Of a stretch of DNA of 64,000 nt, positions 20,501-62,500 are shown in pieces. The notes beneath the pieces are model-generated. The model made no database searches, was not told where the DNA came from, and saw only the letters and a program-made list of their open reading frames with translations. The stretch comes from Mizuhopecten yessoensis. Its lineage: Eukaryota. Both the position numbers and the translations under genes were made by a program. The DNA lies in the NCBI RefSeq assembly GCF_002113885.1, contig NW_018407568.1, positions 28,278-92,277 of the forward strand. Reading direction: 5' to 3'. The first letter of the stretch is position 1, and the number at the start of each line of letters is the position of its first letter.

Positions 20501-23500
20501 ACTTTACTGGTCATTTGTTTGATGAAGGTGACAGAGTACATATCAAACTATCATCAAAACATCAACCATAAACATTTCACAGGTTGTGCTGTAGGAACTT
20601 GAATTTAATATATATAAATATATATACCAACCCGAAGAAAATATTTCGAAACTTCAAAATTTGATCAATAGATTTAAACTGAAAATGTGGTAACAATTGA
20701 TCCAAAAATCTTGAAATCAAGTAGGATTGAGCAAGGTAAATGAACTGATTAAACAAAAGCTACTGACCGACATGACCACAATAACTTACCTGACACGCTC
20801 CACCGTGACAGTGGCAGAGGGTCGAGCCACCTGTGGTTGTGGCGGAACTGACTTGGTCTGCTGGGACTCGATCTGCTTCTGTAACTGTTGTATCTGTTAA
20901 ACAATATAAAATAAATTCATAAATTCTAAAGAAACTTGAGAATATTTTTTTGTTGAATTGCCATCTCTATTTAATTGAAACTGACTTTCACATTTCAGCT
21001 GGTTTGTATACAATAACATAGCAAGTCTGCAACTCCAGCAGATTCTATTTAGAAATCTCCAAAGAAATAAAGAGAAAAGGCATCAAAATTTCATAATAGC
21101 ACTCTGCAGGGTACTAAATTTCAATTCAATAGTATTTCAATGCTTCTTTTTCTGCTATTGACTATCTCGTTTTGTTTTTCAAGCCAATATACCAACTCCT
21201 TTCATAATGACAACACTTTCACGAGAAAGCACCCAGGGGTGGCATATCCCCAGGGAAAAGTCACATTTGTTCTGAAGTTATCATCTGGAAAAGTGTAACC
21301 AACCAGGATTCTATTTTTTAGCAACACTGACCTTGCAATTGACTTCTACTGGACCATGCCCAAAATCGATAAGGATCTTTGCATCCACTAGAGCAACGTT
21401 AACACAGACACTAAGTTTGAAGATTTTATGATCATTTGTTCTCAAATTATCATCCGAAAAGTGCGATGGACAGCCACCATGCCTGACCAGTCTATTTGTT
21501 CAGTGGGAGAGGGGGACTAACCTTGGTCTGTAGCTCGGTGGCGATGGACAGCCCCCCTGCCTGACCAGTCTATTTGGTCAGTGGGAGTGGGGGACTAACC
21601 TCTGTAGTTCGGTGGCGATGGACAGCCACCATGCCTGACCAGTCTATTTGTTCAGTGGGAGTGGGGGACTGACCTTGGTCTGTAGCTCGGTGGCGATGGA
21701 CACCCCCCCTGCCTGACCAGTCTATTTGGTCAGTGGGAGTGGGGGGCTAACCTTGGTCTGTAGCTCGGTGGCGATGGCCCCCCTGCCTGACCAGTCTATT
21801 TGTTCAGTGGGGGTGGGGGACTAACCTTGGTCTGTAGGTCGGTGGCGATGGACAGCCCCCCTGCCTGACCAGTCTATTTGGTCAGTGGGAGTGGGGGGCT
21901 AACCTTGTTCTGTAGCACGGTGGCGATGGACAGCCACCATGCCTGACCAGTATATTTGTTCAGAGGGAGAGGGGGACTAACCTTGGTCTGTAGTTAGGTG
22001 GCGATGGACAGCCACCATGCCTGACCAGTATATTTGTTCAGAGGGAGAGGGGGACTAACCTTGGTCTGTAGTTAGGTGGCGATGGACAGCCACCATGCCT
22101 GACCAGTCTATTTGTTCAGTGGGAGTGGGGGACTGACCTTGGTCTGTAGCTCGGTGGCGATGGACAGTCACCCTGCCTGACCAGTCTATTTGGTCAGTGG
22201 GAGTGGGGGACTAAACTTGGTCTGTAGCTCGGTGGCGATGGACAGCCCCCCTGCCTGACCAGTGTATTTGGTCAGTGGGAGTGGGGGACTAACCTCTGTA
22301 GTTGGGTGGCGATGGACAGCCACCATGCCTGACCAGTATATTTGTTCAGAGGGAGAGGGGGACTAACCTTGGTCTGTAGTTAGGTGGCGATGGACAGCCA
22401 CCATGCCTGACCAGTATATTTGTTCAGTGGGAGTGGGGGACTAACATTGGTCTGTAGTTCGGTGGCGATGGACAGCCACCATGCCTGACCAGTATATTTG
22501 TTCAGTGGGAGGGGGGGACTAACATTGGTCTGTAGTTCGGTGGCGATGGACAGCCGCCCTGCCTGACCAGTCTATTTGGTCAGTGGGGGACTAACCTTGG
22601 TCTGTAGCTCGGGGGCGATGGACAGCCACCCTGCCTGACCAGTCTGTTTGGTCAGTGGGAGTGGGGGACTAACCTCTGTAGTTCGGTGGCGGTGGACAGC
22701 CACCCTGCCTGACCAGTCTATTTGTTCAGTGGGAGTGGGGGCCTAACCTTGGTCTGTAGCTCGGTGGCGATGGACACCCTGCCTGACCAGTCTATTTGGT
22801 CAGTGGGGGACTAACCTTGGTCTGTAGCTCGGTGGCGATGGACAGCCACCCTGCCTGACCAGTGTATTTGGTCAGGGGGAGTGGGGGACTAACCTTGGTC
22901 TGTAGTTCGCTGGCGATGGACAGCCAAGCCACCTGACCAGTCTATTTGGTCAGTGGGAGTTGGGGACTAACCTTGGTCTGTAGCTCGGTGGCGATGGACA
23001 GCCACCCTGCCTGACCAGTCCATTTGGTCAGTGGGAGTGGGGGACTAACCTTGGTCTGTAGCTCGGTGTTTTCCTCCTGGGCTCTCTGTAACACAGTTTG
23101 TACCTCAGACACATTGTTAATGGCAGAATCCTTTGTAGCTCGGGTTTCTGCCAGTTCTTTCTCCATTTTGGACAGTTTCTCTTCCACCTCTGATCGTACT
23201 GCCAACACTCTCTGCTCTACATCACCTAAGTGTTTGAAATCAAGGTCTGACATCAGCAGCGGCAAATTTTGCTACAACACAGCTGAACCAGACTAGTGAG
23301 ACAAGTTTATGACCTGCCAACACCCGTGGTCTCTGTTGATAACTTTGTTTTGTATGATTTCAAAGCTTGAAAAATGGGATACTTAAAACAATCAATTACA
23401 AGAATAAGGGATCTAAATCATGTCTTTCACTGAACTTACTTAACTATTTTTTATTTAATAACTTACCATAGAAATCATAAATATATGCAAACAAGTTTTT

Positions 23501-26500
23501 TCTAATAATCAAAAAGAATGATGATAAAATTTGAAAGCTGCAGCCATAGAGAATGTTTTATGATTGTGATGATTATCTGCGATGACTTCAGACATGAAGA
23601 TATTTTACGATAATGACACTCTGAAACAGTTGCAGACAAAGACGTTGTATAAAACCTGTACTGTAACAGTAGTTGAAAAAGACAACACACCTTTCATTTT
23701 TTCTGACACGGACATCTTCTGTTTTTCAGACATGGACAGTTTCTGTTTCAGATCGTTCATTTCTGTAGTGACTTTTTCAATCTGTTCATTCTGCGAGCCA
23801 ATCTTTTTCTTTGCAGCTTGTAAGACGTTTCGTGATTGGTTGAGTTTTTTTTCATATTCAGCATTTTCTTCCCTGACCTTGGAACTTTCCTCTTTACTCT
23901 GTGTCAGCTCCTGAAATTATAATGCTTAACTGGTTAACAGTGTCAGCTTCTGAAGTTATAATGCTTAACTGGTAAACAGTGTCAGCTCCTGAAAATAATC
24001 ATTCTTAACTGGTTAACAGTGTCAGCTCCTCGTTAGCTTTACGGTTAAACCTTTCAATTTCCCCCCTCTTCTTTTCTACTCCAGTTCCCCCTCCCCCTCC
24101 AACTAGCTACTGATTCTGGCAAACATATTCTCTTTGAACACAATTTCTAAGGCAAACATTTACTCATGTAACATTTGCTTATCTGACAAAGAATTTCCTC
24201 ATCAGCATCAAACTCATATGTATTTCACATTTGTATATCTGACAAGGAATTTCAAATGACACTGCATTACATTTGATCTTTTCATCATTGATGAATTTGA
24301 AGATCTTTTTCAGGAGATGATATACAGACCTGTTGTAGTTTTAAGGACTGTTCCTTGGTAGTGTTGGACTCGGTCGTCGTCTGCTCCAATCTCTGTTTGA
24401 GTTCGTCTCTCTCCTTCTCTGCGGCGCTGAGCTTCTCCTGGATGGGAGCCACGGCCTGTTCAATGACCTCTGTGCTTGGTGGAGCAGGTTCTTTACTCTG
24501 AGCTGCCTGTTGGGCCTGGAAGTCGTCCAGCTCTTTCCGTACGGCCTCCGCCTGCTCCTTATACTTTCGTCCGATCTTCTTCAGCTGTAAAGGAAATTTT
24601 TATCAGATCATTCTTAACTCTACTTTTCATCAGTACATTTTCACATTGCAAATTAAAAGTCACTAGACCTTAACAGAACATAAACAAGTAATTGTTAACA
24701 TAAGGATCCAGTGATCATGAGTGAGCTGAGCAATGCTAAGAAGCAATATTACAGTGAGAGTAAGAACTACATGGCCCTGGACCAGTTGTGTCCATTTAAC
24801 CTGACTAGGGAAGGAGACAAACAAACATAGTAAGAACTACGAGGCCCTGGACCAGTTGTGTCCATTTAACCTGACTAGGGAAGGTGACAAAAAACCAAAG
24901 TAAGAACTACGAGGCCCTGGTCCAGTTGTGTCCATTAAACCTGACTAGGGAAGGTGACAAACTAAGAACTACGAGGCCATTAAACCTGACTAGGGAAAGA
25001 GACACACTAACATCCTGTTATGATTACAGAGAAGTTTCTTACCTGGTTTATTGTTTTTGTCTTTTCTTCACTGTCGTTGTCCTTTGTTACACATTCAGCC
25101 ACTTTGCCTGCAATTTCCTTCCTGTTTTATGTTTAAATAAAAGTCAAAAATCATGAAACAGGAATATAGTGATGATACCCATTAGAAAGACTTTTTTGAA
25201 ATCAAATAAGAGTTACTGATTTGAAGAACAAATGTGTTTCCTCAAGCAACGAAACCTCATAAAAAAAGTCATATGAACAAACCACAGGTTACCGATACAA
25301 GTTTAATTTTGGCATGGAATATGGACCGATCTATATTTCCACAGTCCCCACGTTACACAGGAGAAATACTTGTTTATATAAAATAACTGGAAACCAACCC
25401 TGTGAACTATACATGCATAGGTGATAAAATATTAAACAGCTGTTTTACTCACTGGAATTTTTCTGTTTCCTGCTTGCTTGCATTTAGTTCTCTCCTGTAA
25501 AATGAAACATAACACATGTATAGTCTGTCGACATGGTCAGAAGTTGTTGACAACATTTTTCAGAAAGAGAGTTGAACGAGTAAAATCTGATCCCAGTTGT
25601 GCATTGCATGCTCAGTCAAATTAACAAGATCATAAACTGTAGTTACGATTTCTTCAGGACATTACGGTCCTTAAGGATCCCTGTCCCACTGCGCTGTATT
25701 TTTTGTTTCTTTATACAGTAACTTCCCCTTAACTTCTGTTTAGATGTACATGGAACTAGAGAAAATGTTGGGTCAGGACACTTCCATTGACCTGGTAGCT
25801 TTTTATACCCAGCGAGACCCATACTCGTTACCAAGCAAGGACAAACTAAAATGTCGGCACTCCCTAAGAAACGATAGTCAGAATAGATCGGGAAGATCTC
25901 AAAACAAGATTTTTTTTTTTTTTAAATCTCAATTGAAAGCTTTTTAACTTGCACTGTCAGCTTTAAGATGTCCTTGTTCACCAAATCTGGTTACTCCAGG
26001 TGAAAAAGTATAGAAGATATGCCCGGACAAACATTTTCAAAAGTTAAGGTCAATTCATTGGTCACAGTGAGGTCATAGTGACCTAATTTGAATGCACTCT
26101 GCACTCCACGTTCCCAAGATGTCCTTGTACATCAAATCTGGTTACTACAGGTGAGATAGTATAGAAGATATGTCCCTACAAACTTCTCCCACAGAAGTAT
26201 ACATCCTAAGGAAACCTTATGTACAGTTTAAAATATTTCAAATTCTTGTGAAAATCTCTTTATAAAGAAACTTACTGTATTTTTTCTATTTCTTGTTTGC
26301 TGGCACCTGATTCTCTCCTGAAGTATAAAACCATGTTCTAATTTTTAACCACATAGAAGTTAAATCATTAAATAAATTATCACTATTTACCTCCTCCAAA
26401 TCCTGTATTTAACGAACTTACATTTGGATATCTTTGAAATTTAAATTTTACTTACCGTTACATTTTCTTCAATGGGATAATTATATAAGCTCTATCTCAA

Positions 26501-32500: not shown

Positions 32501-35500
32501 TATAACAATCTTTGGTCCAGGGTTCAAACCCCGGGGCTAGCCCTGTATAACACTCTGTGGTCCAGGGTTCAAACCCCGGGGCTAGCCCTGTATAACACTC
32601 TGTGGTCCAGGGTTCAAACCCCGGGCCAGCCCTGTAAAACACTCTGTGGTCCAGGGTTCAAACCCCGGGCCAGCCCTGTATACCACTCTGAGGTCCAGGG
32701 TTCAAACCCCGGGCCAGCCCTGCTGACATTTTACCCTCAGAACACTGTTGTTGATCATATTTTGTTTATTTCATCTTTATTATTTCTCATAAAAGTTCCG
32801 CAAGGTGTGGCTTTCTTTTAAGAAATGATTAATTTAAAGCCATGACCATGCCGAAAAAAACGGTTTCCAGTACTGAGTTACGGTTTCTGGCAGTGGTACA
32901 GGGATTCATATGTAACATTGTAATCAAACACCTCTGTAATCAGATACCCATGTAACCTGACACCCATGTAATCAGATACCTCTGTAATCAGATACCTCTG
33001 TAATCAGACACCTCTGTAATCATACACCTCTGTAATCAGACACCCATGTAACCAGACACCCATGTAACCAGACACCCATGGTACCAGACACCTCTGTAAT
33101 CAGATACCATCGTAACTTGACACCTCTGTTATCAGACATTTCTGTATCAGCTATTGTGTGCTTAGCGAGGTACATTTACCTCAAGGACATGGGTATGATA
33201 TTTATTTTTAAGGTGAACTCTTATTCACTGATGGCTTATAGCTACTCACAAAATAAATCATGCAGTAAACTTTTAAAGCAGTATAAACCAAGCAATTGAA
33301 AATACCCAGTCCCAGGCCTAGAGAGGAAGAGCTTTTAAATGTCACAAAGTCAGGATCGATCTATCACCTGATCTTGTTTAAGTCTGTCATTTGTCATACC
33401 TTGGATTCCTCGAGTATCTTTTCTGCTTTGATACGGCACTCCTGTTCTGTAGCTAACTTTTCATTATGTTCGTCCATCTGAAAAAATCATATGATCTTAA
33501 ACACAAAGACAAATACTTCAGTATCTTAGCTACTGACATAAATCAGAATAATACAATCACACACAATCCTATTACTGGGGAATACAATAACACAGCATGT
33601 CATACTTCAATTATTACATTGGTGTACGGGCTATTCCATGATTTATCGTATGGGGGAGGTGGGAGGCACCTTTATTAATATATTATATGGGGGAGGTGGG
33701 AGGCACCTTTATTAATATATTATATGGGGAGGTGAGAGGAACCTGCACTAATGTATTATGGGTTAAAACCAGATCTGCCTATACTATCATTCTTTATCCT
33801 AAATCAATTTTAAGACTTTAAGTATGATGGGGTCTCGGAAAAAGTGCCTCTCACCCCTCCCGTATGGTTAATTCTCAAACAGCCCTAATAACTTTCGTCC
33901 CTGTTTTGTAAAGTTTGATTTATATATTAGACCTCTATTGATGATCTTCACTGTGGAGATAATAGTTTGGGTAATCTGTAATATACCAACTGTCTCGATC
34001 ACCTTACCATTATAGGGACTGTTTTAATAGTTTAGTATCCCTACACATTAGAATTGGATGAATGAGGTGGTCTCCGAAACATCTGGGGCCAGTACTTGGT
34101 TTAGGTTGATCTTCTCGAAGGTATTGGAAAGAGATCTTTGTATAAGGGCTGTTAAACTATTAATCATTTGGGAAAAGTTAGTGCTATGTTTCAAATAAAA
34201 CTTAAGCATGCCCGATTTTCTTGTAAAACTTGAACTCAGTGAATCCAGGAATAGAACCACAACAGATTATGGCAGCTGCAAACACACCTGTTTCTTGATT
34301 TTATGGTTAACATGTGTACATGTCCATGAGATTTTGTATTTAATACTTGTCAATTTATATACCAAACCAATGACTGAACAAGACACAAAATATAAAACCT
34401 TCCCTACCTGTTTTTTAATGATTGTAAGGGCCTCCACGTCAGCAGCGTGTAGTATCAGTTCTCTCTGGTATTTATCCTGGACCTGGAAATCAACCAATTC
34501 TCCCGAGGTTAGGTAGACATGATGATGAACATGATGATTAATATATAATCCTGTATACTTCTCATTACAGACTTTCATTATAAACTATTTGGTTTGGTTT
34601 AGTTGGTTTAACGTCCTATCAACAGCTAAGGTCATTAAANNNNNNNNNNNNNNNNNNNNNNNNNNNNNNNNNNNNNNNNNNNNNNNNNNNNNNNNNNNNN
34701 NNNNNNNNNNNNNNNNNNNNNNNNNNNNNNNNNNNNNNNNNNNNNNNNNNNNNNNNNNNNNNNNNNNNNNNNATGTATGTTGTGTATGTGTGTATTGTGT
34801 ATGTGTATGTGTGTTGTGTATTGTGTATATGTGTGTTGTGTATATGTGTTGTGTATGTGTGTTGTGTATGTGTGTATTGTGTATGTGTATGTGTGTTGTG
34901 TATTGTGTATATGTGTTTTGTGTATGTGTTGTGTGTATGTGTGTTGTGTATGTGTCTTGTGTATGTGTGTTGTATATGTGTGTTGNNNNNNNNNNNNNNN
35001 NNNNNNNNNNNNNNNNNNNNNNNNNNNNNNNNNNNNNNNNNNNNNNNNNNNNNNNNNNNNNNNNNNNNNNNNNNNNNNNNNNNNNNNNNNNNNNNNNNNN
35101 NNNNNNNNNNNNNAGGCAGTGTATGTTGGGAATGGTGTGCTTGCCTCCTTGTAATAGCATGGATCTGATACCGGCCTCATAGTGCTATCTCTCTGAAACA
35201 CCATACCAAAGGCACCCAGCACAGCATTCCCCCCGGTCACATCATACTGACAACGGGTGAACCAGTTGTTGGCATTACCCCAAATACTGAATGTGAAGCA
35301 GGGACTAACAACTACCATTTTTGAGAACTTTGTTATGTCCTGGCCAGAGGACAGAACCCATTGCCTTCCTCACCTGGGCAGACGCTCAACATTAAAACCA
35401 GAAGTGAGGTGTTATATCAACTATCAAAGTGCCACAAACTGCTAGATGATTACCAAACTGCTGTGTGAGAAATAACAATCAAATAAACTATGTTGTAAAT

Positions 35501-47500: not shown

Positions 47501-50500
47501 TATGCTGTAATTTTATGTATCGAACACTATGACAACACAGGTATATAAGTCAATTTCATTTTAAATTTCATATGCAAGACTGACCCTTCATCTAGTCAAT
47601 AATTATTTTAACTTTAATCAGCTTTAAGTGAATGGTGATGTCAGAAGCATCCACAAATCGAAGTGAATAACTAAAACAAATATTTCTTATTTATGGATAT
47701 TGTTATAACTCACTGACCTCATGACCTTGAATAATTAACTTACCTGAAGGTGACCAGCTTATCACTGATGACCTGGGAGGAACTGCTGACCTCTGTGGAC
47801 GGCTGTTCTACTTCCCGAACAACACGCCCGCCTCGCAACTCGGCCATCTCTTTCAGGATGTACCGCAGCTATTGTCATGGAAACAGAAAACATGTTAAGA
47901 TAAATAAGTCTCGGGGATTAACAAAGAAAACAACCTTCACTAGTGCAAATTCTGGTAAACAAATTGTGAAAGAAGACATCGCAGAAAATACAAACACCCT
48001 CATGAAATGTGAACTCTTACAAGAGACGATGTTTGTAAACTTTTTTGTGAAGTTTCATGATAATTGGATCGCAGAAAATACAAACAACCTCATGAAATGT
48101 GAACTATTACAAGAGATGATGTTTGTAAACATTTTTGTGAAGTTTCATGATAATTGGATAAGAAATTAAGTCAAATTCATAGTAAAAGCAACCTATTTTT
48201 TGCCAGTAAAAGGTTGAAACCATACCTCGAATAAGAGGTGATGTTCATGAACATGTTGTGTAAAGTTTCGTGGATGATTGGAAAAGAATTGAAGTGTGTA
48301 GAGTGGTGACATCAAAAATTCTATTTAAAGTGACAGTGTCCTCGTTTTTGACTGTAGAAGGTGGAAACGCCGACTAGTACAAGGGGTGATGTTGGTGGAC
48401 ACGCGTGAAGTATCATGACAATCAGATAAGAAACAAGGTCTGTTGAGCGGTGACGCCATTTGGGACACAAAGGTACGGCACATCCCTATATACCATCGAC
48501 GACCCATCGTGAGGGTACATTGACTGAATGAAATGGTGTTACCTGCTTTGACAGATCGTTTGTCTGAAGCTGGAGCTTCTGATTCTCTCTCTGCATGTGA
48601 TTGTACTTCCTATTGATGTCATCTGCTTCAAGTCGTAGATTTTGAGATTCCTGAAAGAGAAGGCAAAATAAACAACCCTTTCACAGCTCTACCAATACCA
48701 TCAATGATCCAACAGAATCTTACAAACAAAACACTTCTTATTTCACACACCCCAAACCTATCCCTGTGTTGTATCCCAACTAACACACCCTTTACCTATC
48801 TCATCGTTTCATCTGATACCTTCGCTTATGTTTGGTTGTGTGCAGTCTTATTCAAACCAATTTTGTATTACATTTTCTTAAAAAGAGTGGAAACAAATCC
48901 TAATGTTACTGACCAACATGGAAGCATCGAGTTGTCTGGTCAGCTGGTCAATGTTAGCCAGAGAGTTCTCGTAATCCTGCCTCTGTTTCTTCAGTAGCGG
49001 GGCTTTCTCCTCAATTTCCTTTAATACAATGGCAACACAGATTAAATATTTACAATCAACAGAGTTTTTGGTCAGGTGATATCTAATGAATCGGGGAATA
49101 TGATCTTTGCTTTCTTCTTTACTTTATTCCAGGCAGTGTTTGGTGAGCCCCATCATCCGTAATATATGTCTTCCTCCTTCCCCTATAAACCCCACAGTTC
49201 ATTTGTTTTCCTTTTCATTGTAAATTTGTATACACAGTCACAGAAATTTCTTCAGTACAGATTTACAATCTTCTAGAAATCAGGGGAAAAAACATGTGTC
49301 ATGTCCCAACTGATTATATTGAGCTGGATAATGATGCCAAATCAATGAAAAACTGAAATTCTATGGCTGATTATTTTCTATTCTGCAGAAATTATGTTCT
49401 TAAGATAACCATCTTATCAGTACACACATTAATTAGGCTTGGAAGTATTTATAAACATGTTATGGTTATTTCTGCATAGTCAAGTTTCTACACATGTGAT
49501 TTACCTGCAGAATTTGTGTCAGGTACTGGTTTAGTCGCTGATTTTCTTCCTTCTCCAGCATAAGTGCATCAGAGGCCTGGACATACTCATTGTAGATCTG
49601 TCAAACACAAGTACATACTTATTGTAGATCTGTCAAACATAAGAACATACTCATTGTAGATCTGTAAAACAAAAGTAAATACTAATTGTAGATCTGTCAA
49701 ACACAAGTACAAACTCATTGTAGATCTGTCAAACACAAGTACATTCTCATTGTAGATCTGTCAAACGCAAGTCCATACTCATTGTAGATCTGTTAAACAC
49801 AGGTACATACTCATTGTAGATCTTTCAATCACAGGTACATACTCATTGTAGATCTGTAAAACAAAAGTAAATACTAATTGTAGATCTGTCAAACACACGT
49901 ACATACTTATTGTAGATCTGTCAAACGCAAGTACATACTCATTGTAGATCTTTCAATCACAGGTACATACTCATTGTAGAACTGTCAAACACAGGTACAT
50001 ACTTATTTTAGATCTGTCAAACACAAGTACAAACTCATTGTAGATCTGTCAATCACAGGTACATACTTATTTTAGATCTGTCAAACACAAGTACATGCTC
50101 ATTGTAGATCTGTCAAACGCAAGTCCATACTCATTGTAGATCTGTTAAACATAAGTACATACTCATTGTAGAGCTGTCAAACATAAGTACATAAGACATG
50201 AAGGATAGCTTACTTTCTTGTGTGAAACATTAAGGATGTTTCCCTGTGTGAGACATTAAGGATGTTTACCAGCATGAGACATTAAGGTTGTTTACCTGCA
50301 TGAGACATTAAGGATGTTTCCCTGCATGAGACATTAAGGATGTTTAAACATCCTGCATGAGACATTAAGGATGTTTCCCTGCATGAGACATTAAGGATGT
50401 TTCCCTGCATGAGACATTAAGGATGTTTAAACATCCTGCATGAGACATTAAGGATGTTTCCCTGCATGAGACATTAAGGATGTTTCCCTGCATGAGACAT

Positions 50501-53500
50501 TAAGGATGTTTAAACATCCTGCATGAGACATTAAGGATGTTTAAACATCCTGCATGAGACATTAAGGATGTTTCCCTGCATGAGACATTAAGGATGTTTC
50601 CCTGCATGAGACATTAAGGATGTTTACCTGCATGAGACATTAAGGATGTTTAAACATCCTGCATGAGACATTAAGGATGCTTCCCTGTTTGAGACATTAA
50701 GGATGCTTACCTGTGTGAGACATTAAGGATGTTTATCTGCGTGAGACATGAAGGATGTTTACCTGTGTGAGCCTACATACTTATTGTAGATCTGCCAAAC
50801 ACAAGTACATACTCATTGTAGCTCTGTCAAACACAAGTACATACTGATTGTAGATCTGTCAAACACAGGGACATACTTATTGTAGATCTGTCAAACGCAA
50901 GTACATACTCATTGTAGAACTGTCAAACACAGGTACATACTTATTTTAGATCTGTCAAACACAAGTACATTCTCATTGTAGATCTGTCAAACACAAGGAC
51001 ATACTCATTGTAGATCTGTAAAACAAAAGTAAATACTAATTGTAGATCTGTCAAACACAAGGACATACTCATTGTAGATCTGTTAAACATAAGTACATAC
51101 TCATTGTAGATCTTTCAATCACAGGTACATACTCATTGTAGATCTGTTAAACACAGGTACATACTCATTGTAGAACTGTCAAACACAGGTACATACTTAT
51201 TTTAGATCTGTCAAACACAAGTACATTCTCATTGTAGATCTGTCAAACACAAGTACAGACTTATTGTAGATCTGTCAAACACAAGTACATACTCATTGTA
51301 GCTCTGTCAAACACAAGTACATACTCATTGTAGCTCTGTCAAACACAAGTACATACTGATTGTAGATCTGTCAAACACAGGAACATACTAATTGTAGATC
51401 AGTCAAACACAGGTACATACTCATTGTTAATCTGTCAAACACAGGTACATACTTATTGTAAATCTGTCAAACACAAGTACATACTGATTGTAGATCTGTC
51501 AAACACAAGTACAAACTCATTGTAGATCTGTCAAACGCAAGTACATACTCATTGTAGATCTGTCAAACATAAGTACATACACATTGTAAATCTGTCAAAC
51601 ATAAGTACATAAGACATGAAGGATAGCTTACTTACCTGTGTGAAACATTAAGGATGTTTACCTGTGTGAGACATTAAGGATGTTTACCTGCATGAGACAT
51701 TAAGGATGTTTACCTGCATGAGACATTAAGGATGTTTACCTGTGTGAGACATTAAGGATGCTTACCTGTGTGAGACATTAAGAATGCTTACCTGTGTGAG
51801 ACATTAAGGATGTTTATCTGCGTGAGATATTAAGGATGTTTACCTGTGAGAGACATTAAGGATGCTTACATGTGTGAGACATTAAAGATGTTTACCTGTG
51901 TGAGACATTAATGATGCTTACCTGTGTGAGACATTAAGGATGCTTACCTGTGTGAGACATTAAGGATGTTTATCTGCATGAGACATTAAGGATGGTTACC
52001 TGTGTGAGACATTAAGGATGTTTACCAGTGTGAGACATTAAGGATGTTTACCTGCATGAGACATTAAGGATGTTTACCTGCGTGAAACATAAACGATACT
52101 TACCTGTGTGAGAGACATGCCAGACTTCAGTACTTTACTGGTCACAGAAGCAGTAGGAAACATACTCTCTACCTGGTCTTCACTGGCAACTGAAACAGAC
52201 ACACAACTTGTAGATGTTAAATACTTTACAATAAATGTATTACAAATCTCATAATGACTAGCCATAACATAGTGTTGAAATGAAAGCATGAAAACAAGGC
52301 TATAGTTGAAACGGTTGAACCTGTGAAGAAAACGACAGGCACAGATCTGACCCGAGGCTGACTTCAGGAATATTCTGCTTGTGAAGATTGAGGGGTCGAG
52401 ACGCACCGAAACTAAAATGCTGACTATTGCTAGTTTGCGTTATTTCTTTCTTAAACAATGTCAAGCCATATGTAGTTTTTAAGATACGTTATGTAATTTA
52501 GTGGACGCATGAAAGAAGGCTTTAATATTCTTGATACATTGTTATTTATTCTCCCAAACTGTGCATTTTTAGCTCTGCTTAAAGAATGGTACAAGTGCGG
52601 TCGTTTATCGTTGAATATTTCTGCGCCACCTGTAACGCTTCAACTGGGATATGCGAATGTAACCCAACACTGCAGAAAACTGAAACATGTTTTGATGGAA
52701 GAGCACTTACTCCTGTTTTTGGTCTGTTCCAGAAGATCATTGGCGCTGACCAGTTCTTGTCTCAGCTTCTCAATTGTCTCCTCTGTAGAGAAAAGTAGCC
52801 ACAATATACAAACAAAAAGACACAATTTACCAAAGAAAGAGGTCTGCAATAGAATCAAACTTTTTTCAATCAGTTAAATCAATTTCCGTCAATAATCTAA
52901 TCCCAATATTTTTTTTGTCATTCTATGCAGTATTCCGATCCATAAACATGATATCTTTAGTATGATGTTCCCAATTAACCTCATTTGAATTTCCATTGAA
53001 AAACATGCTTCAAATGATAAATATTCCATGGCCATCCCCAAACCCAACAAATCAGTCCATCATAAATCCAAAGTTAGAGGTGCAGATTGAAAAAAACAAG
53101 TTTCAAATATTAGTACCTACTATTGCCCAAGTGTTTTACATCTAGATGGGCAATTTTTGTAACTCCATATTATAAAATTGAACAGATTTTACTGCATACC
53201 ACTAAACCAGGTCTGATATGAAATAGGATCACTCTCAAATGTTTACACAGTTCTGTAAGTTACGACAAAACTGCAATTTCATTGTGAACATTACCTCTGC
53301 TTTCTATATCTACTTGGGAGTGTTTCGCTCCCTCCTCCTTCAAATTTTCAAGTTCAGTATGAGCTGTAATATAATTCAGACACAAGATCATTCACTTGAA
53401 CCCAACAAAATACTTGTCTATATACCACATGTAGTTGTCTATACAGTGGCCAACAACATCAGACATTTTTCAGATAATATCTCTTCCCTGTAGTCTTTAA

Positions 53501-56500
53501 CAATTGACAAATAACTTTTAACTAAATGATTGTTTTAGTCATGACGGTAAATTAATTTGAATTTCACATAAAAGGACATATAATCTGACAAATAATCAGA
53601 ACTAAAATGATAAACCAAATAATTTAAAATAGTATCTGCTGTTTTGTATCAGTAAACATCAAAATTAATTCAGCATAAGTTTCAAATTCCTAACAAACTA
53701 AATTTTTTGTCATCGAAAATGGTCATCTTCATAAAAATAAATATTTCATTAATAGTCATTATATTACTGGTAGACAGAATGAGATAGAGACCAAGCTGAT
53801 GATACTATTAAACTTGTCAAGGTATATTGGTAACAACTCTATAAATAGCTTGAATCCTGTCATACCATTGGCTGCCTCCTTCAATAGTGTCCTTAGTTCC
53901 TCTACAGCGCTAGTCAACTCCTTCACTTTGCTTTCTGCCTCGTCCTTAGATGTCTGTAACAATATTTAACTGATAAATACACAATGAACACCAACAATAA
54001 CAGTAAACAGAGAAACTCAACACACAGCAGCATCGAAAACAAATTTGAAACAAGCCATTCGGATTGATATGTCTCACCTGTGCCCCACTTTGACCATCAA
54101 TACACATGTCAAGTTTGGTTGGTGTAGCACTTATAGTTTCAGAGAAACTAATTTAAACACAACAAGAGGCCCATGGGCCTTAACGGTCACCTGAGTCTAT
54201 AGTATTTATTTTTGTTGTTGAAATATGTACCAATTTGAGTAAAAAATAGTATAATGTTAACTTAACTTTGTCAGGACCATGAGCTGATCATTCCTAGACC
54301 AATTTTAAGTGAGATCGGCCTATTAGAACTTAGTAGCAAAATAGCGGCCATGGCAGCCAAATTGTATTTCTGATTGACCCGAAAAATAACAACACTTTGT
54401 CAGGACCATGAGGCGATCATTCCTACCAACTTTCAGTTCAATCGGCCCAGCAGAACTTGACTTTAAGTTTGAAATGTAAAATGTTAACGGACTACGGACG
54501 ACGGACGACGGACGACGGACGACGACGGACGAAAACGGATAGCAATAGGTCACTTGAGCTAAAGCTCAGGTGACCTAAAAACATAATGTTGATGGAGATG
54601 CTGACAAAGTCAATGGACGATGACAGGTATAGGCCGCATCCAGCATTTGATACATGGGATGATATATACTACCTCAGATGCATCTATGGACCAAGTTTGG
54701 TTGGTCTAGCACTTATACTTTCAGTGAAACTAACTTCAATGCAAAAACTTAAGCATTGGTCTTGCTTCCGCTACTTCGTCACGGCGAGACAAAAATACAT
54801 GAGAAGAAACACAAAATTGGGCAATTGTAAAAGAACAATATCTTCCATAAGATTCATCAGTTTGGAAATAAGTGATATCAAAGTTTTACTTTATACACAC
54901 ACTACGTACATTATTTGTGTTGTACACTTTTGTATTTGTTTGTGTATAAAGGTAAAATTAAAAAGGACTATTAAAGTAATAACTAACCTTGTAAAGGTCT
55001 GGGAGATGACCCTTACCAGACTTTTACAATTACTAACCATGTATGGGTCTATTAAGCGACCACTTGCCAGACTTTTACAATTACCAACCTTGTATGGGTC
55101 TATATATAAGGCAACCCCTATAAGTAACACATTTTTAATATTAACTTACCTTGTACAGGTCTATTTGACGACTCTTAGCCAGACTTTTACAACTTACCTT
55201 GTACAGGTCTATTAGACGACTCTTAGCCAGACTCTTACCATAACTTACCTTGTACAGGTCTATTAGACGACTCTTAGCCTGCCTGTAACAAAAACTTACC
55301 TTGTACAGGTCTATTAGGCGACCCCTAGCCAGACTGTAACAATAACTTACCTTGTACAGGTCTATTAGCCGCCTCTTAGCCTGCCTGTAACAAAAACTTA
55401 CCTTGTACAGGTCTATTAGACGATTCTTAGCCTGCCTGTAACAATAACTTACCTTGTACAGGGCTATTAGACGACTCTTAGCCTGCCTGTAACAATAGCT
55501 TACCTTGTACCGGTCTATTAGACGACTCTTAGCCAGACTGTAACAATAACTTACCTGGTACAGGTCTATTAGACGACTCTTAGCCAGACTTTAACAATAA
55601 CTGACCTTGTACAGGTCTATTAAGTGACCCCTAGCCAGACTGTAACAGTAACTAACCTTGTACAGGTCTATTAGACGACTCTTAGCCAGACTGTAACAAT
55701 AACTTACCTGGAAAAGGTCTATTAGACGACTCTTAGCCAGACTTTTACCATATCTTGCCTTGTACAGGTCTATTAGACGCCTCTTAGCCAGACTTTTACC
55801 ATATCTTGCCTTGTACAGGTCTATTAGACGCCTCTTAGCCAGACTTTTACCATATCTTGCCTTGTACAGGTCTATTAGACGCCTCTTAGCCAGACTGTAA
55901 CAGTAACTAACCTTGTACAGGTCTATTAGACGACTCTTAGCCAGACTTTTACAACTTACCTTGTACAGGTCTATTAGAGGACTCTTAGCCAGACTTTAAC
56001 AATAACTTACCTTGTACAGGTCTATTAAGCGACCCCTAGCCAGACTTTTACAATAACTTACCTTGTACAGGTCTATTAGACGACTCTTAGCCAGACTTTT
56101 ACAATAACTTACCTTGTACAGGTCTATTAGACGACCCTTAGCCAGACTTTTACAATAACTTACCTTGTACAGGTCTATTAGACGACCCCTAGCCAGACTT
56201 TTACAATAACTTACCTTGTACAGGTCTATTAGACGACCCCTAGCCAGACTTTTACAATAACTTACCTTGTACAGGTCTATTAGACGACCCCTAGCCAGAC
56301 TTTTACAATAACTTACCTTGTACAGGTCTATTAGACGACCCCTAGCCAGACTTTTACAATAACTTACCTTGTACAGGTCTATTAGACGACCCCTAGCCAG
56401 ACTTTTACAATAACTTACCTTGTACAGGTCTATTAGACGACCCCTAGCCAGACTTTTACAATAACTTACCTTGTACAGGTCTATTAGACGACCCCTAGCC

Positions 56501-59500
56501 AGACTTTTACAATAACTTACCTTGTACAGGTCTATTAGACGACCCCTAGCCAGACTTTTACAATAACTTACCTTGTACAGGTCTATTAGACGACCCCTAG
56601 CCAGACTTTTACAATAACTTACCTTGTACAGGTCTATTAGACGACCCCTAGCCAGACTTTTACAATAACTTACCTTGTACAGGTCTATTAGACGACTCCT
56701 AGCCAGACTTTTACAATAACTTACCTTGTACAGGTCTATTAGACGACCCCTAGCCAGACTTTTACAATAACTTACCTTGTACAGGTCTATTAGACGACCC
56801 CTAGCCAGACTTTTACAATAACTTACCTTGTACAGGTCTATTAGACGACCCCTAGCCAGACTTTTACAATAACTTACCTTGTACAGGTCTATTAGACGAC
56901 CCCTAGCCAGACTTTTACAATAACTTACCTTGTACAGGTCTATTAGACGACCCCTAGCCAGACTTTTACAATAACTTACCTTGTACAGGTCTATTAGACG
57001 ACCCCTAGCCAGACTTTTACAATAACTTACCTTGTACAGGTCTATTAGACGACCCCTAGCCAGACTTTTACAATAACTTACCTTGTACAGGTCTATTAGA
57101 CGACCCCTAGCCAGACTTTTACAATAACTTACCTTGTACAGGTCTATTAGACGACCCCTAGCCAGACTTTTACAATAACTTACCTTGTACAGGTCTATTA
57201 GACGACCCCTAGCCAGACTTTTACAATAACTTACCTTGTACAGGTCTATTAGACGACCCCTAGCCAGACTTTTACAATAACTTACCTTGTACAGGTCTAT
57301 TAGACGACCCCTAGCCAGACTTTTACAATAACTTACCTTGTACAGGTCTATTAGACGACCCCTAGCCAGACTTTTACAATAACTTACCTTGTACAGGTCT
57401 ATTAGACGACCCCTAGCCAGACTTTTACAATAACTTACCTTGTACAGGTCTATTAGACGACCCCTAGCCAGACTTTTACAATAACTTACCTTGTACAGGT
57501 CTATTAGACGACCCCTAGCCAGACTTTTACAATAACTTACCTTGTACAGGTCTATTAGACGACCCCTAGCCAGACTTTTACAATAACTTACCTTGTACAG
57601 GTCTATTAGACGACCCCTAGCCAGACTTTTACAATAACTTACCTTGTACAGGTCTATTAGACGACCCCTAGCCAGACTTTTACAATAACTTACCTTGTAC
57701 AGGTCTATTAGACGACCCCTAGCCAGACTTTTACAATAACTTACCTTGTACAGGTCTATTAGACGACCCCTAGCCAGACTTTTACAATAACTTACCTTGT
57801 ACAGGTCTATTAGACGACCCCTAGCCAGACTTTTACAATAACTTACCTTGTACAGGTCTATTAGACGACCCCTAGCCAGACTTTTACAATAACTTACCTT
57901 GTACAGGTCTATTAGACGACCCCTAGCCAGACTTTTACAATAACTTACCTTGTACAGGTCTATTAGACGACCCCTAGCCAGACTTTTACAATAACTTACC
58001 TTGTACAGGTCTATTAGACGACCCCTAGCCAGACTTTTACAATAACTTACCTTGTACAGGTCTATTAGACGACCCCTAGCCAGACTTTTACAATAACTTA
58101 CCTTGTACAGGTCTATTAGACGACTCTTAGCCAGACTTTTACAATAACTTACCTTGTACAGGTCTATTAGACGACTCTTAGCCAGACTTTTACAATAACT
58201 AACCTTGTACAGGTCTATTAGACGACTCTTTGCCTGCAGTTCCTGGTTAAATTGGTCCTCTGACTGAGCCATTCCATTTCTGGCCTGTAAATGTAAGCGG
58301 TTTGTTAACTTAGAGTGAAGAAATATTCAATAATGTGGGAAAAAAAATACCATGTTCCATTTTTCAAATGTATTCCGGGATTAAATATTTTTGCTAGCAA
58401 GACCTTTGAGATAACCTTAATTTCTACACCTATAAATTTTGTAACCTTGAAATGTCCTCAGTATTGTTATTGATGTATATGACTATAATTATTTTACAGT
58501 TTTTCCCACAAGACCATAGTTATTTTACAACCCTTGGCAGGTATGAGATTACAGTCTTCAGCAATCAGATCTAAAGGAAAGATACCATAAAAACTAGAAA
58601 GACAGGAAAATTCCTCAATCTACCAGCATAAACATTATTTTCTTCTATTTCAGATATAAATCATTTTGAAACTGAAAACACATCTTTAAAAGAATTCCTC
58701 TGAGATTAGGAAGACTCATATTACTGCTTCAGTTTCTGAACAGGATTTTAATCATCCATGCATCCTTCATTTTTTGTTTTGTTTTGGGGTTTTTTTGTGT
58801 ACGAAATTAAAGTTATCTTACATGTACATCAGAAGTTCTTGTAATAGATTGTAACTGTATTATCTAACATCCTTCTGTACAAAACTAATATATTTTCCTC
58901 AGTTTCTGTTTTAGACAAAAATTAATTACCCTGTAATATCACTCTGTATTATTACCCTTTGATATCGTTCTGTATTATTACCCTGTAATATCGTTCTATA
59001 TTATTACCTGTATTATCGTTCTGTATTATTACCCTGTAATATCGTTCTGTATTATTACCTGTATTATCATTCTGTATTATTACCCTGTAACATCGTTCTA
59101 TATTATTACCTGTATTATCGATCTGTATTATTACCCTGTAATACTGTTCTGTATTATTACCCTGTAACATCGTTCTATATTATTACCTGTATTATCGATC
59201 TGTATTATTACCCTGTAATAATGTTCTGTATTATTTCCCTGTAATATCGTTTTGTATTATTACCCTGTAATATCGTTCTGTACTATTACCCTGTAATATC
59301 GTTCTATATTATTACATGTATTATCGTTCTGTATTATCGTTCTGTATTATTACACTGTAATATCGTTCTATATTATTACATGTATTATCGTTCTGTATTA
59401 TTACACTGTAATATCGTTCTATATTATTACATGTATTATCGTTCTGTATTATTACCTGTATTATCGTTCTGTATTATTACCCTTTAATATCGTTCTGTAT

Positions 59501-62500
59501 TATTACCCTGTAATATTGTTCTGTATTATTACCCTGTAATATCGTTCTGTATTATTACCCTGTAATATCATTCTGTATTATTACCCTGTAATATCGTTCT
59601 GTATTATTACCCTGTAATATCGTTCTGTACTATTACCCTGTAATATCGTTTTGTATTATTACCCTGTAATATCGTTTTGTATTATTACCCTGTAATATCG
59701 TTCTGTATTATTACCCTGTTCTGTCGTTCTGTATTATTACCCTGTAATATCGTTCTGTATTATTACCCTGTAATAATACAGAACGATATTACCCTGTAAT
59801 ATCGTTCTGTACTATTACCCTGAATTATCGTTTTGTATTATTACCCTGTAATATCGTTCTGTATTATTACCCTGTAATGTCGTTCTGTATTATTACCCTG
59901 TATTATCGTTCTGTATTATTACCTGTAATATCGTTCTGTATTATTACCCTGTAATATCGTTCTGTATAAGACTAATTATCTTGCATGCTTTAATTGATGT
60001 ATGAGATTTTAGTTTACATCCTACAGTGCCTGTATGAGAGTAGGATTACCTTAATTTTACAGTTCCTATACCAAACAATAATATGAATGATCTTACATCC
60101 TTCAGTTTCTGTATAAGGCCGTCTATCATGGTGGCTATACCACACACTAATATAAATTATCTTACATCCTTCAGTTTCTGTATAAGGTTGTCTATCATGG
60201 TGGCTATACCACACACTAATATAAATTATCTTACATCCTTCAGTTTCTGTATAAGGCCATCTATCTTGTTGGCCTGTTCTCCCTGGGATGATTTCAGAGC
60301 CGCAACTGTTTCCTGGAGGAACGTGTTCTCTCCTATCTTTTCCTCCAACTTGCTCTGAGTTTCCAGAAGACTGGCTGTCTGTAATGGATCAAGAGTAAGC
60401 TCAACACTTTTAACAAGAAGTTGCAAACAATTTTTTGTTTCAAAAATTCAAATAGGATAGATTTGATGAATTTGATATGTTCAGAAAACTGATCTGATTT
60501 TTTTTCATTTCTTGCATACATTTTTGAGATTTTCTTTAATTAGTGAGCATGCAAGTTCTACAGGATGAGATATTTCTTTTTTCAAATCATAGTTATACAA
60601 ATGCTTCTTTAGGACTGAGTATTCAATAAAACCATCAATATATATATAAATCTGATTAAATCCAAAATATTTATAAAATCTTGTAAAATATTTCAAGTTA
60701 AAAAATCATCTGTAATACCTTACAATGCTGTTATATTATCTGTTAACCTGCTATAATACAGTAAGGTTCAATGATATATGTCCATCTTTATGGTTGATGT
60801 CAGTCACAGACTATTTTAGTGAAGAAACCTTTTATGACTTACCTGTTCCTTTTTGACGTTTAGGAGCTCATTGGTTTTCTCAAACAGTTGTTTGTCCAGC
60901 AGATCTAGCTGTCTCTGTATCTGACTCTTCTCCTGTTCCAGTCGTTTGTTCTGGAACTGTTCAACACAACATCTAACTGATAATCATTTCAGTGTTTGAG
61001 TTAGCGTTTTATGTTAATGATTGAAGTTATTTCTCTATGCTGAACATAACAGTTGTACAGTGATCCTTGACAGAAATGTCTAAGCAAAGTTAAGTTTGTC
61101 AAAGGCTAGTGATCATGAGAGCTATGTCGGTGTCATTGCCATCCTTGATACTCCATGGGGTTACACTCATTTTTGCTCTCTGCACCCCTGGAATGTGTCA
61201 TAACAAAATTGAAGGCTCAGTGTGCACCACCGTGTGGATGAGACAAGACTAGTTTGATCCTTTGATGTACATGAAAAGAAACTGTCGGTCGGGTAACGGT
61301 AAAATTGATCATTTATTGGCTTTGAAGTCGGGTGTCGCTCCTCTGTAGTCTTCAAAGGACAGATACCAGCCTTAGCGATTGGTCAAGGTTTTCACCCCAA
61401 GACCAATCAATTAGCAAGTCGTGTGCCTTCAATTTAGCTATGACATTTCCAGGGGTGCAGAGAGCAAAAGTGAACTTAACCACTGGCGTATAGAGGATGT
61501 GTTGTTATGCGATCGGGACTTGTAGTACAAGGAAAGATTCCGTTTGAATTACTGACATTTCAGTCAGATGTAAAACATATAAAAAAAAAAGAATAACTGC
61601 CTGAATAGGGGTATAGCAACAAAAGCTCACCAACAATTTCAAACAAAGTATAAGCCATACCTCCAAGGTGACACTCTGGTTCTGTACCTCCGCCAGTTTG
61701 GCCTGCGCCTCACATTTCTCTGTGTTGGCTCTCGACACTTTGTCCGTCAACTCCTTCCACTCTTCTGTGATTAAAAAAATAAAATGGGTGTGTTATTCAA
61801 GATAATAACACACCGAAATGCCTCACAAGATAACTGCAGCCACTGTCATACAATGATTCAACCTGTAGCAGCAGACATTTTAACAAGTCGAATTTGAAAG
61901 CTTAATTGAAGAATACACTTTAACAGCTAAATTATACTGGAACATACAGTATACAAAAACTTACTTATCTCATCAAGTGAAAACAATTTTTGTAGCACAT
62001 TTTAAATATCCATAGTTGACTGGCACATTGAATATCAAGTTTACCATTTATTCTATCAATTTCTCTGTTCCTCTTCTCAAGTAAGACACTTAAATCTCTC
62101 TTGTCCAACTCCAGCTGTTCATTTGATTTACTGAGGCGGAGCTGTTGAAACAAATGGATGGTTTTACAAATTGTCAATTCAAAGACTTAATAGTATCAGA
62201 ATAAATTATTATTGACAGTTTGTAGGATGTTGTTTCAATCATAAAAACAATTCAATATCAACTTCATTTCATAAACAATAACAAAGTAATGTTTTACCTG
62301 TGATCAGAAATCATAAATTTNAGGAAAGAAGTTGTTTAAAGTAAAAAGTTGACGCCGGACGGACGGACACCGCACCATAACATAAGCTCACTTGCCCTTC
62401 GGGCAGGTGCGCTAAAAAAAACATTGTCACCGCAGTATTGCCATACTTGTGAAATATACATGGTATAAATTCAACAGGAAACTATTATATCCCCCAATAT

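What the first reader, a model, noticed from the sequence alone, without database searches (positions are those of the whole stretch)
49581..52119. An intron made almost entirely of copies of its own two splice sites, duplicated as a block
Seen: the 2506-nt intron (52103-49598) reads, in transcription order, about 19 donor copies, about 26 acceptor copies, about 21 donor copies and about 19 acceptor copies, with almost no unique DNA. The donor-to-acceptor linker (plus strand AAACATAAGTACATAAGACATGAAGGATAGCTTACTT) occurs twice, at about 50179 and 51597, showing that the donor-array/acceptor-array unit was itself duplicated. Many donor copies in the second block have lost the GT context (GGAAAC, GATGTT), while most acceptor copies retain AG. 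Inference: a short ancestral intron was inflated from both ends, and correct splicing requires the very first donor and the very last acceptor.
Basis: partly seen in the sequence, partly recalled or inferred. Interest (0 to 1): 0.82.

Follow-up and report, generated by a model that had tools for sequence, protein, structure and literature searches.

The report
Intron built from its splice junctions
One intron of the Yesso scallop's TPR nuclear-pore gene has grown from a short ordinary intron to 2.5 kb made almost wholly of tandem copies of its own two exon-intron junctions. It is still spliced at the first donor and the last acceptor, and it is a large two-sided example of a repeat type already known as a "mirage" minisatellite.

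Summary
The minus-strand intron 52103-49598 (2506 nt) reads as follows:
- 18 donor-junction units of 26 nt
- a 44-nt linker
- 25 acceptor-junction units of 32 nt
- a 29-nt acceptor-to-donor joint
- 20 donor units
- the same linker again
- 18 acceptor units

Each unit carries 14-18 nt of true exon sequence. Both units occur nowhere else in the 988-Mb assembly.

The gene is nucleoprotein TPR of Mizuhopecten yessoensis. RNA reads and RNA contigs show only the joint from the first donor to the last acceptor. Of 906 decoy pairings, only that one keeps the reading frame.

The same intron position holds 146 nt in a snail and 261 non-repetitive nt in a pearl oyster. It is absent in a rock oyster. In another scallop genus it is 1145 nt, with 29 donor copies and about 3 acceptor copies but no second block.

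This is a "mirage" (exon-junction) minisatellite, known from amphioxus and from human F7, CBS and IFI6. This scan has already reported the kind many times on other DNA of this same genome. The new points here are the large acceptor-side array, both sides in one intron, and the block duplication. The block order and the copy numbers rest on one assembly that I believe to be short-read based.

The parts
52104..52189 (-). Upstream TPR exon (...KSGMSLTQ). Its last roughly 14-16 nt are copied in every donor unit.
   Evidence: Encoded exactly by database protein P0002, M. yessoensis TPR-like isoform X2. RNA contig ends and the RNA joint fall at 52189 and 52104.
51636..52103 (-). Donor-junction array 1: 18 units of 26 nt. 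The first is the native donor CAG|GTAAGT (diverged edge unit). GT is kept in 16/18 units.
51592..51635 (-). Linker 1 (44 nt): begins with a perfect CAG|GTAAGT and ends with ...TTTGACAG. Probably the remnant of the short ancestral intron.
   Evidence: An independent DNA contig covers 51551-51674 with 0 mismatches.
50792..51591 (-). Acceptor-junction array 1: 25 units of 32 nt, each made of the last 14 nt of the intron plus the first 18 nt of the exon.
50763..50791 (-). Acceptor-to-donor joint (29 nt): the start of the downstream exon fused to the end of the upstream exon. This is the breakpoint of the block duplication and a potential pseudo-exon.
   Evidence: DNA contigs of run X1 at single-copy depth cover the bins 50652-50859 (bin-level only).
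50218..50762 (-). Donor-junction array 2: 20 units of 26 or 31 nt. 15 have lost GT (GGAAAC, or the palindromic GATGTTTAAAC insertion variant).
   Evidence: No independent read support.
50174..50217 (-). Linker 2, the paralogue of linker 1 (GAAAGTAAGC... instead of GTAAGTAAGC...).
49598..50173 (-). Acceptor-junction array 2: 18 units of 32 nt. The last AG (49598/49597) is the one used.
49505..49597 (-). Downstream TPR exon (IYNEYVQASDALMLEKEENQRLNQYLTQILQ). Its first 18 nt are copied in every acceptor unit. It holds a purine-rich stretch (GGAGAAGGAAGAAAA).

Best explanation
This is a two-sided 'mirage' (exon-intron-junction) minisatellite in intron 6 of the partial RefSeq model of the Yesso scallop TPR nucleoporin gene.

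Origin (inferred). A short, ordinary, ancient intron suffered local tandem duplications whose units straddled a junction. The 26-nt unit covers the 5' splice site and the 32-nt unit covers the 3' splice site. For the 32-nt unit, the period equals the spacing of a TATGT(A/C)C microhomology, one copy in the intron and one in the exon. Unequal exchange or slippage then expanded both arrays into the intron, the only direction that leaves the mRNA intact. Later a segment running from the last bases of the upstream exon to about 18-26 nt into the downstream exon was duplicated in tandem, giving donor array - acceptor array - donor array - acceptor array.

Function. The repeats have no demonstrated function and are most likely tolerated passengers.

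Splicing (shown). Only the first donor and the last acceptor are seen joined in RNA.

Why the mRNA stays correct (inferred).
- The native donor is both the first and the best-scoring site.
- The used acceptor is the one adjoining the real exon body and its downstream donor (exon definition).
- Every other donor/acceptor pairing gives a frameshift or a stop, and so would probably be cleared by nonsense-mediated decay.
- Most donor copies lying downstream of acceptor copies have lost GT, which removes pseudo-exons.
For: - Structure and junction content of the units.
- Junction probes (10+10 nt) recur 10 times (donor) and 44 times (acceptor) inside this intron and never in the other 55 introns.
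- The units are private to this locus in the 988-Mb assembly: 35 and 37 hits, all in C4241:77875-80354.
- Gene identity: Pfam TPR_MLP1_2, E 7e-10. P0002, 'nucleoprotein TPR-like isoform X2 [Mizuhopecten yessoensis]', is encoded exactly by the window, with 56 GT..AG introns.
- Splicing: the joint 49597/52104 is seen in raw RNA reads (2 reads) and in two RNA contigs (depth 100 and 38). It is absent from the DNA run, and no other joint was listed.
- Only 1 of 906 decoy pairings keeps the frame.
- A position weight matrix (PWM) built from the gene's other introns gives 13.1 bits for the native donor, against 7.6-11.0 for all but one decoy.
- Block duplication: the linker occurs twice, and its 161-nt surroundings are 94% identical.
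- Ancestral state: 146 nt in Lymnaea and 261 nt without repeats in Pinctada at the same position and phase. Ylistrum has 1145 nt with 37 nt x 29.5 donor copies and about 3 acceptor copies.
- Same kind in the literature: PMC3087553, PMC3902484 and PMC1557585.
Against: - The four-block order and the copy numbers come from one assembly of 82,659 contigs, which I recall as short-read. Linker 2 and the inside of donor array 2 had no cover in any run laid.
- RNA support is shallow (2 raw junction reads). Contigs drop rare isoforms, so low-level or NMD-cleared use of decoys is not excluded.
- The used acceptor scores 8.6 bits while three decoys score 14.5. Site strength therefore does not explain its choice, and the exon-definition account is an inference.
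- The GT loss in array 2 could be chance spread of two variants, because the units are not independent.
- The microhomology origin fits the 32-nt unit exactly but fits the 26-nt unit only after three small indels.
Confidence: 0.8

Rival explanations
1. Assembly inflation. The junction arrays are real, but the second donor-acceptor block, and perhaps much of the copy number, is an artefact of assembling a heterozygous tandem repeat. For example, two alleles may have been laid one after the other.
For: The assembly has 82,659 contigs. No run gave cover of 50132-50547, which holds linker 2 and most of donor array 2. Ylistrum has a single donor array followed by a few acceptor copies. An amphioxus mirage was reported as mis-assembled in a draft genome.
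Against: The two blocks differ in composition: array 2 has variants absent from array 1. The joint has no N gap and is a specific 29-nt fusion. DNA contigs of another run, at single-copy depth (about 10), cover the bins holding that joint. Holes in cover are expected where 26-nt units repeat exactly.
Confidence: 0.15
2. Functional decoy array. The spare splice sites are used to divert part of the TPR pre-mRNA into frameshifted, NMD-degraded products (regulated unproductive splicing). Alternatively, pairing between donor and acceptor arrays loops the intron out to help splicing.
For: Every alternative pairing gives a premature stop. Many decoys score as well as real sites of this gene. The donor-unit x acceptor-unit duplex is somewhat more stable than shuffles (z -2.2), and the intron fold has z about -5.
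Against: No decoy joint was seen in RNA. The repeat content differs completely between scallop genera and is absent in Pinctada and Lymnaea, so nothing is conserved except the junctions themselves. Fold z-scores are inflated by repetition. Similar arrays sit at many other junctions, which argues for a mutational by-product.
Confidence: 0.06
3. A junction-targeted mutational process. Tandem duplication is actively seeded at splice junctions, for example coupled to transcription or splicing, rather than placed at random and filtered.
For: 7 of 23 arrays in this gene span a junction, against 3.8 expected (p about 0.05). There is a strong donor bias across three species' TPR genes: 19 donor to 3 acceptor, p 9e-4. 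The same junctions carry arrays in two scallop genera.
Against: The excess over random placement is only about two-fold and borderline. The donor bias can equally come from stronger selection against upstream decoy acceptors. Shared junctions may simply be shared ancestry. Pinctada TPR has none.
Confidence: 0.12

Closest known systems
'Mirage' minisatellites of amphioxus (Adh3, globins BflGb6/BflGb9, troponin C, PGBD5)
   Same: Tandem repeats whose unit spans an exon-intron boundary. Both 5' and 3' boundaries can be hit. The copies carry AG/GT signals, yet normal splicing is kept. Edge units escape homogenisation (PMC3087553; PMC3902484). Here too the native first donor unit is the most diverged unit.
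   Different: Here the host is a mollusc. Both boundaries of one intron are amplified to 18-25 copies each, the whole block is then duplicated, and the intron has almost no other DNA. The reported amphioxus globin cases have 1-6 copies of 150-160 bp.
Human minisatellites whose first unit spans a donor junction (F7 IVS7 37 bp x 5-9; IFI6/6-16; CBS IVS13; LMNB2; PDGFA intron 4)
   Same: The authentic donor is followed by repeated pseudo-donors. In F7 only the most upstream site is used, and the pseudo-sites are functional but silent (PMC1557585). Here too the first donor is the one seen in RNA.
   Different: The F7 pseudo-sites are identical to the real site. Here the native donor (GTAAGT) is stronger than all but one of the copies (GTAAAC, GTAAGC). 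The human cases are donor-side only, whereas this intron also has 44 acceptor copies, with the last one used.
Intron gain by tandem duplication of an AGGT-containing exon segment (Rogers model)
   Same: A tandem duplication across splice signals creates extra usable GT/AG pairs (discussed in PMC3087553).
   Different: No new intron was created. The intron is old: it has the same position and phase in Pinctada and Lymnaea.

Membership tests
Mirage / exon-intron-junction minisatellite | Head-to-tail tandem array | tested here: met
   TRF finds four arrays with periods of 26 and 32 nt, 18.5-26.2 copies, at 87-89% matches.
Mirage / exon-intron-junction minisatellite | The unit contains exon sequence joined to intron sequence across the real splice junction, and the array abuts that junction | tested here: met
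   The donor unit is the last roughly 14-16 nt of the exon plus the first roughly 10-12 nt of the intron. The acceptor unit is the last 14 nt of the intron plus the first 18 nt of the exon. Junction probes recur 10 and 44 times in this intron and 0 times in the other 55 introns.
Mirage / exon-intron-junction minisatellite | The authentic sites are still used and the copies do not disturb the mRNA | tested here: met
   The only joint listed is 49597/52104, seen in raw RNA reads and two RNA contigs. Depth is low, so rare decoy use is not excluded.
Mirage / exon-intron-junction minisatellite | Length instability or polymorphism between alleles or individuals | tested here: inconclusive
   Short contigs cannot size the arrays. 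Scattered single-base differences and holes in cover were seen.
F7-type pseudo-donor VNTR | Pseudo-sites identical in sequence to the authentic donor | tested here: not met
   The native donor is CAG|GTAAGT at 13.1 bits. Copies are mostly GTAAAC (7.6 bits) or GTAAGC (11.0 bits), and only the one at 51635 is identical.
F7-type pseudo-donor VNTR | The most upstream donor is selected | tested here: met
Dispersed satellite or transposon-borne repeat that merely resembles splice sites | The same unit is present at other loci | tested here: not met
   All hits at up to 3 mismatches lie within this intron. None were found elsewhere in the assembly.
Intron newly gained by tandem duplication | The intron is absent at this position in relatives outside the lineage | tested here: not met
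   It is present at the same position and phase in Pinctada (261 nt) and Lymnaea (146 nt). It is absent only in Saccostrea, where the two exons are fused into 179 nt.
Intron-hosted small RNA (miRNA or snoRNA) | A match to a curated RNA family at its gathering score | tested here: not met
   The only hit is mir-30-like, 28 bits against a cut-off of 50.2, on both strands. It is caused by a palindromic repeat variant.

The most novel reading that the evidence does not exclude
Junction-spanning minisatellites in bivalves are not random duplications filtered by selection. They are seeded by a process tied to the 5' splice site. That would explain the 19:3 donor excess across three TPR genes and the recurrence at the same junctions in two scallop genera. 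This intron would then be the rare case where the process also took hold at the acceptor. A milder version: the 44-copy acceptor array shows that 3' splice-site choice here is anchored on the exon body, not on site strength or on first-come order.
Probability: 0.12. Interest if true: 0.7.

Novelty: new member of a known kind. Interest (0 to 1): 0.36.

Why it matters
The kind is known, so the value is as a specimen. Almost all of a 2.5-kb intron traces to about 50-60 nt of junction sequence. There is a dated series for the same intron: 146 nt in a snail, 261 nt in a pearl oyster, 1145 nt in one scallop, 2506 nt in this one, and lost in a rock oyster.

It shows concretely how introns can lengthen without transposons. 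It also warns gene predictors: the RefSeq isoform X2 of this very gene starts inside a copy of another junction repeat.

The acceptor side is the useful part for splicing biology. More than 40 upstream 3' splice sites that score as well as or better than the real one are not seen in mRNA. This mirrors the human F7 donor model and could be tested directly in minigenes. Across the three TPR genes examined, acceptor-side arrays are rare (3 of 22).

Tried and rejected
- Dispersed repeat family: rejected, because both units are private to this intron.
- Unit-order colinearity between the two acceptor arrays: none beyond 2-3 units, so the arrays turned over after duplication. Only the linker surroundings keep register.
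- Donor/acceptor array pairing as a looping device: duplex z is only -2.2, and the whole-intron z of -5 is inflated by repetition. Not pursued.
- Enrichment of arrays at junctions in this gene: 7 observed against 3.8 expected, p about 0.05. This is too weak to claim a seeding mechanism.
- Homology of the Mizuhopecten and Ylistrum donor units: only the exon-derived 9 nt and one 8-mer align. Shared origin and independent birth cannot be told apart.
- Rfam: only a sub-threshold mir-30-like hit.
- Plus strand: no ORF of 60 aa or more in the region.
- Papers: the original 'mirage' paper (PMC117041) is not held. A search for the CBS VNTR gave nothing direct, but the F7 paper's introduction lists the human cases.
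- Orthologue loci could not be fetched for Ostrea, Mya, Mytilus, Nematostella and Physella (no record), nor for Solemya and Sinanodonta (gene too long).
- The first place look-up of earlier findings gave nothing.
Exons were searched singly by reference. Full-length comparisons used the database proteins P0002 and P0088 and their relatives. Exon ends were joined only inside scripts, to place splice sites and check frames.
Full report
**What is there.** Read on the minus strand, window 52189-49505 holds two coding exons separated by 2506 nt. Tandem Repeats Finder reports four arrays that tile the whole interval: 26 nt x 18.5, 32 nt x 26.2, 26 nt x 19.9 and 32 nt x 19.2, at 87-89% matches. Parsing unit by unit gives the following order:
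- the native donor unit plus 17 further 26-nt units (52103-51636)
- a 44-nt linker (51635-51592)
- 25 units of 32 nt (51591-50792)
- a 29-nt joint (50791-50763)
- 20 units of 26 or 31 nt (50762-50218)
- the linker again (50217-50174)
- 18 units of 32 nt, ending at the used acceptor (50173-49598)

The counts, coordinates and the 'almost no unique DNA' statement are therefore right.

**The units are copies of the junctions, not look-alikes.** The 26-nt unit ends with the last bases of the upstream exon (...ATGTCTCACACAG) and starts with GTAA. The 32-nt unit ends with the intron's ...TGTGTTTGACAG and starts with the first 18 nt of the downstream exon (ATCTACAATGAGTATGT.). A 20-nt probe across each junction (10+10 nt, up to 3 mismatches) recurs 10 times (donor) and 44 times (acceptor) inside this intron, and never in the other 55 introns of the gene. 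Pattern searches of the whole 988-Mb assembly find both units only in C4241:77875-80354, which is this intron. They are not a dispersed satellite.

**The gene.** One exon-bearing ORF hits Pfam TPR_MLP1_2 (E 7e-10). A search with one exon ORF returned P0002, which a source names 'nucleoprotein TPR-like isoform X2 [Mizuhopecten yessoensis]'. The window encodes P0002 exactly, in 57 blocks joined by 56 unambiguous GT..AG introns. The finding is intron 6 of that model, phase 0, between ...SGMSLTQ and IYNEYVQ...

**Splicing.** Laying four runs on 49300-52400 gave one joint in the intron: 49597/52104, skipping 2506 nt, with GT..AG on the minus strand. It was seen in raw RNA reads (2 reads) and in contigs of run X17, recorded as RNA (1668 nt long, depth 100), and of run X15, which the run index only guesses to be RNA (depth 38). 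It was not seen in the DNA run. No joint to any internal copy was listed. Depth is modest and contigs drop rare forms, so this shows the dominant mRNA, not the absence of errors.

**Why the outer sites can win.** I scored sites with a position weight matrix (PWM) built from the gene's other 55 introns.
- The native donor scores 13.1 bits (gene mean 8.3). It is the first site and the best, tied only by the copy at linker 1. Most copies are GTAAAC (7.6 bits) or GTAAGC (11.0 bits).
- The acceptor is different. The used site scores 8.6 bits, about 40 copies score 6-10, and three score 14.5. Strength therefore cannot explain the choice.
- What is unique to the last copy is what follows it: the real exon body, with a purine-rich stretch, and its donor 93 nt downstream. 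Anchoring on the exon is therefore my inference.
- Of 906 pairings of 24 GTAA-type donors with 44 acceptors, only first-donor/last-acceptor keeps an open frame. Mis-spliced products would be candidates for nonsense-mediated decay (inferred).
- GT survives in 16/18 units of donor array 1 but in 5/20 of array 2, which lies downstream of acceptor copies and could define pseudo-exons (Fisher 9e-5). This fits selection, but the units spread by copying and are not independent, so it is only suggestive.

**How it arose.** The linker begins with a perfect CAG|GTAAGT and ends with the acceptor tail. It is plausibly what is left of a short ancestral intron. In that sequence a TATGT(A/C)C motif lies 20 nt before the acceptor and again 12 nt into the exon, exactly 32 nt apart. 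That is the period of the acceptor array, as slippage or unequal exchange between microhomologies would give. The 26-nt unit fits a similar CATGTCT pair only after three small indels, so that fit is weaker.

The 161-nt segments around the two linkers (three donor units, the linker and two acceptor units) are 152/161 identical in register. This includes unit-specific variants and exceeds the 87-89% matches TRF reports within the arrays. The 29-nt joint reads as the start of the downstream exon fused to the end of the upstream exon. Both points indicate a tandem duplication of the whole donor-array/linker/acceptor-array block. Away from the linkers the two acceptor arrays share distinctive variants but no long colinear run, so turnover continued afterwards.

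| Species | State of the intron at ..LTQ\|IYNEYV.. |
|---|---|
| Lymnaea stagnalis (L020) | 146 nt |
| Pinctada imbricata (L018) | 261 nt, no repeats |
| Saccostrea echinata (L019) | absent; the two exons are one 179-nt exon |
| Ylistrum balloti (L017:10665-11809) | 1145 nt: 37 nt x 29.5 donor-junction units, then about 105 nt with about 3 degenerate acceptor copies; no second block |

The intron is therefore old and was short. Inflation is a scallop affair, and the block duplication is so far specific to Mizuhopecten (or to its assembly). Only the exon-derived part of the donor units aligns between the two scallops. Shared origin with turnover cannot be separated from independent birth.

**Context in the gene and beyond.** In this window, 7 of 112 junctions carry such arrays: the donors of introns 1, 2, 6, 40 and 50, and the acceptors of introns 6 and 38. 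A simple random-placement model with short ancestral introns expects 3.8 of 23 arrays to span a junction, against 7 seen (p about 0.05). That is a weak excess. The same test on TPR of Ylistrum, Saccostrea and Pinctada gives 7, 8 and 0 junctions. Summed over species, that is 19 donor-side against 3 acceptor-side (p 9e-4; 17:3 and p 0.003 after removing the shared junctions). Acceptor arrays are the rare kind, which makes the 44-copy one here the unusual element.

**What is known.** Tandem repeats spanning exon-intron boundaries were named 'mirages' in amphioxus. They occur on both donor and acceptor sides, leave splicing normal, and have edge units that escape homogenisation (PMC3087553; PMC3902484). 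Human F7 intron 7, IFI6, CBS, LMNB2 and PDGFA have donor-side versions. In F7 the most upstream site is chosen by a scanning-type process (PMC1557585).

After I had reached that reading, the scan's own notes showed many earlier reports of the same kind on other pieces of this genome, with the same comparison. This finding is therefore a further, large and two-sided member of a known kind.

**Limits.**
- The four-block order and all copy numbers rest on one assembly of 82,659 contigs.
- An independent DNA run confirms linker 1 exactly, and it covers the bins that hold the acceptor-to-donor joint at single-copy depth. Nothing covered linker 2 or the inside of donor array 2.
- No long reads could be laid.

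Noticed in passing
window 54978-58226 (minus strand; intron 58203-53954): A 51-nt unit repeated about 64 times that copies the donor junction ...ATAGACCTGTACAAG|GTTAGT. The unit is 17 codons long and in frame with no stop, so the exon's frame stays open for 776 codons through the array. Most copies carry GTAAGT, a closer match to the donor consensus than the native GTTAGT. Ylistrum has a 30-nt donor-copy array for the same junction (L017:7826-8536), which there lies more than 1.2 kb downstream of the donor.
   Followed up: partly
window 60066-60273 and 58925-59967 (minus strand): A 69-nt unit repeated 3 times that copies the donor ...ACAGAAACTGAAGGAT|GTAAGA. It is followed by a 26-nt array of about 40 units and by scattered decayed copies that look derived from the same junction. 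The RefSeq isoform X2 model (P0002) starts at an ATG inside the third copy (60129) and uses that copy's donor (60096), so the annotation was probably misled by the repeat. Ylistrum has 37 nt x 11 at the same junction (L017:5866-6265).
   Followed up: partly
window 21463-23068, 13126-13853, 23901-24030 (minus strand): Three further junction arrays in the same gene: 78 nt x 21 on the donor ...CAGACCAAG|GTTAGT, 18 nt x 28 on the donor ...GTACTGGGG|GTGAGT, and 39 nt x 3.3 on the acceptor ...TTTCAG|GAGCTGACAC. The 24-nt array at 14854-15553 starts about 20 nt after a donor, and a diverged unit appears to start exactly at the donor GT.
   Followed up: partly
L019 (Saccostrea echinata TPR), L017 (Ylistrum balloti TPR), L018 (Pinctada imbricata TPR): Junction-copy arrays are also frequent in the rock oyster TPR gene (8 donor junctions; the largest has 69 copies in an 8.4-kb intron) and in Ylistrum (7 junctions). 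There are none in Pinctada. The donor side dominates 19:3 overall.
   Followed up: partly
L019:10987-11166: Saccostrea echinata lacks the intron at ..LTQ|IYNEYV..: the two exons are fused into one 179-nt exon. The position is occupied in Lymnaea, Pinctada and both scallops, so this is probably an intron loss in that oyster lineage.
   Followed up: no
window 50322-50658 (minus strand): Six units of donor array 2 carry a 5-nt insertion that creates a perfect 16-nt palindrome, GGATGTTTAAACATCC. This is the signature of a template-switch mutation, and it destroys the GT. It produces a sub-threshold mir-30-like Rfam hit on both strands (28 bits against a cut-off of 50.2). The donor unit also happens to contain GTAAACATCC.
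   Followed up: partly
window 52300-52400: Very high and polymorphic read and contig depth (thousands-fold) just upstream of the exon at 52189. This indicates a high-copy dispersed element in the preceding intron.
   Followed up: no
window 34640-34772 and 34986-35113: Two runs of N flank a TG-rich microsatellite inside a TPR intron. They were left as they are.
   Followed up: no
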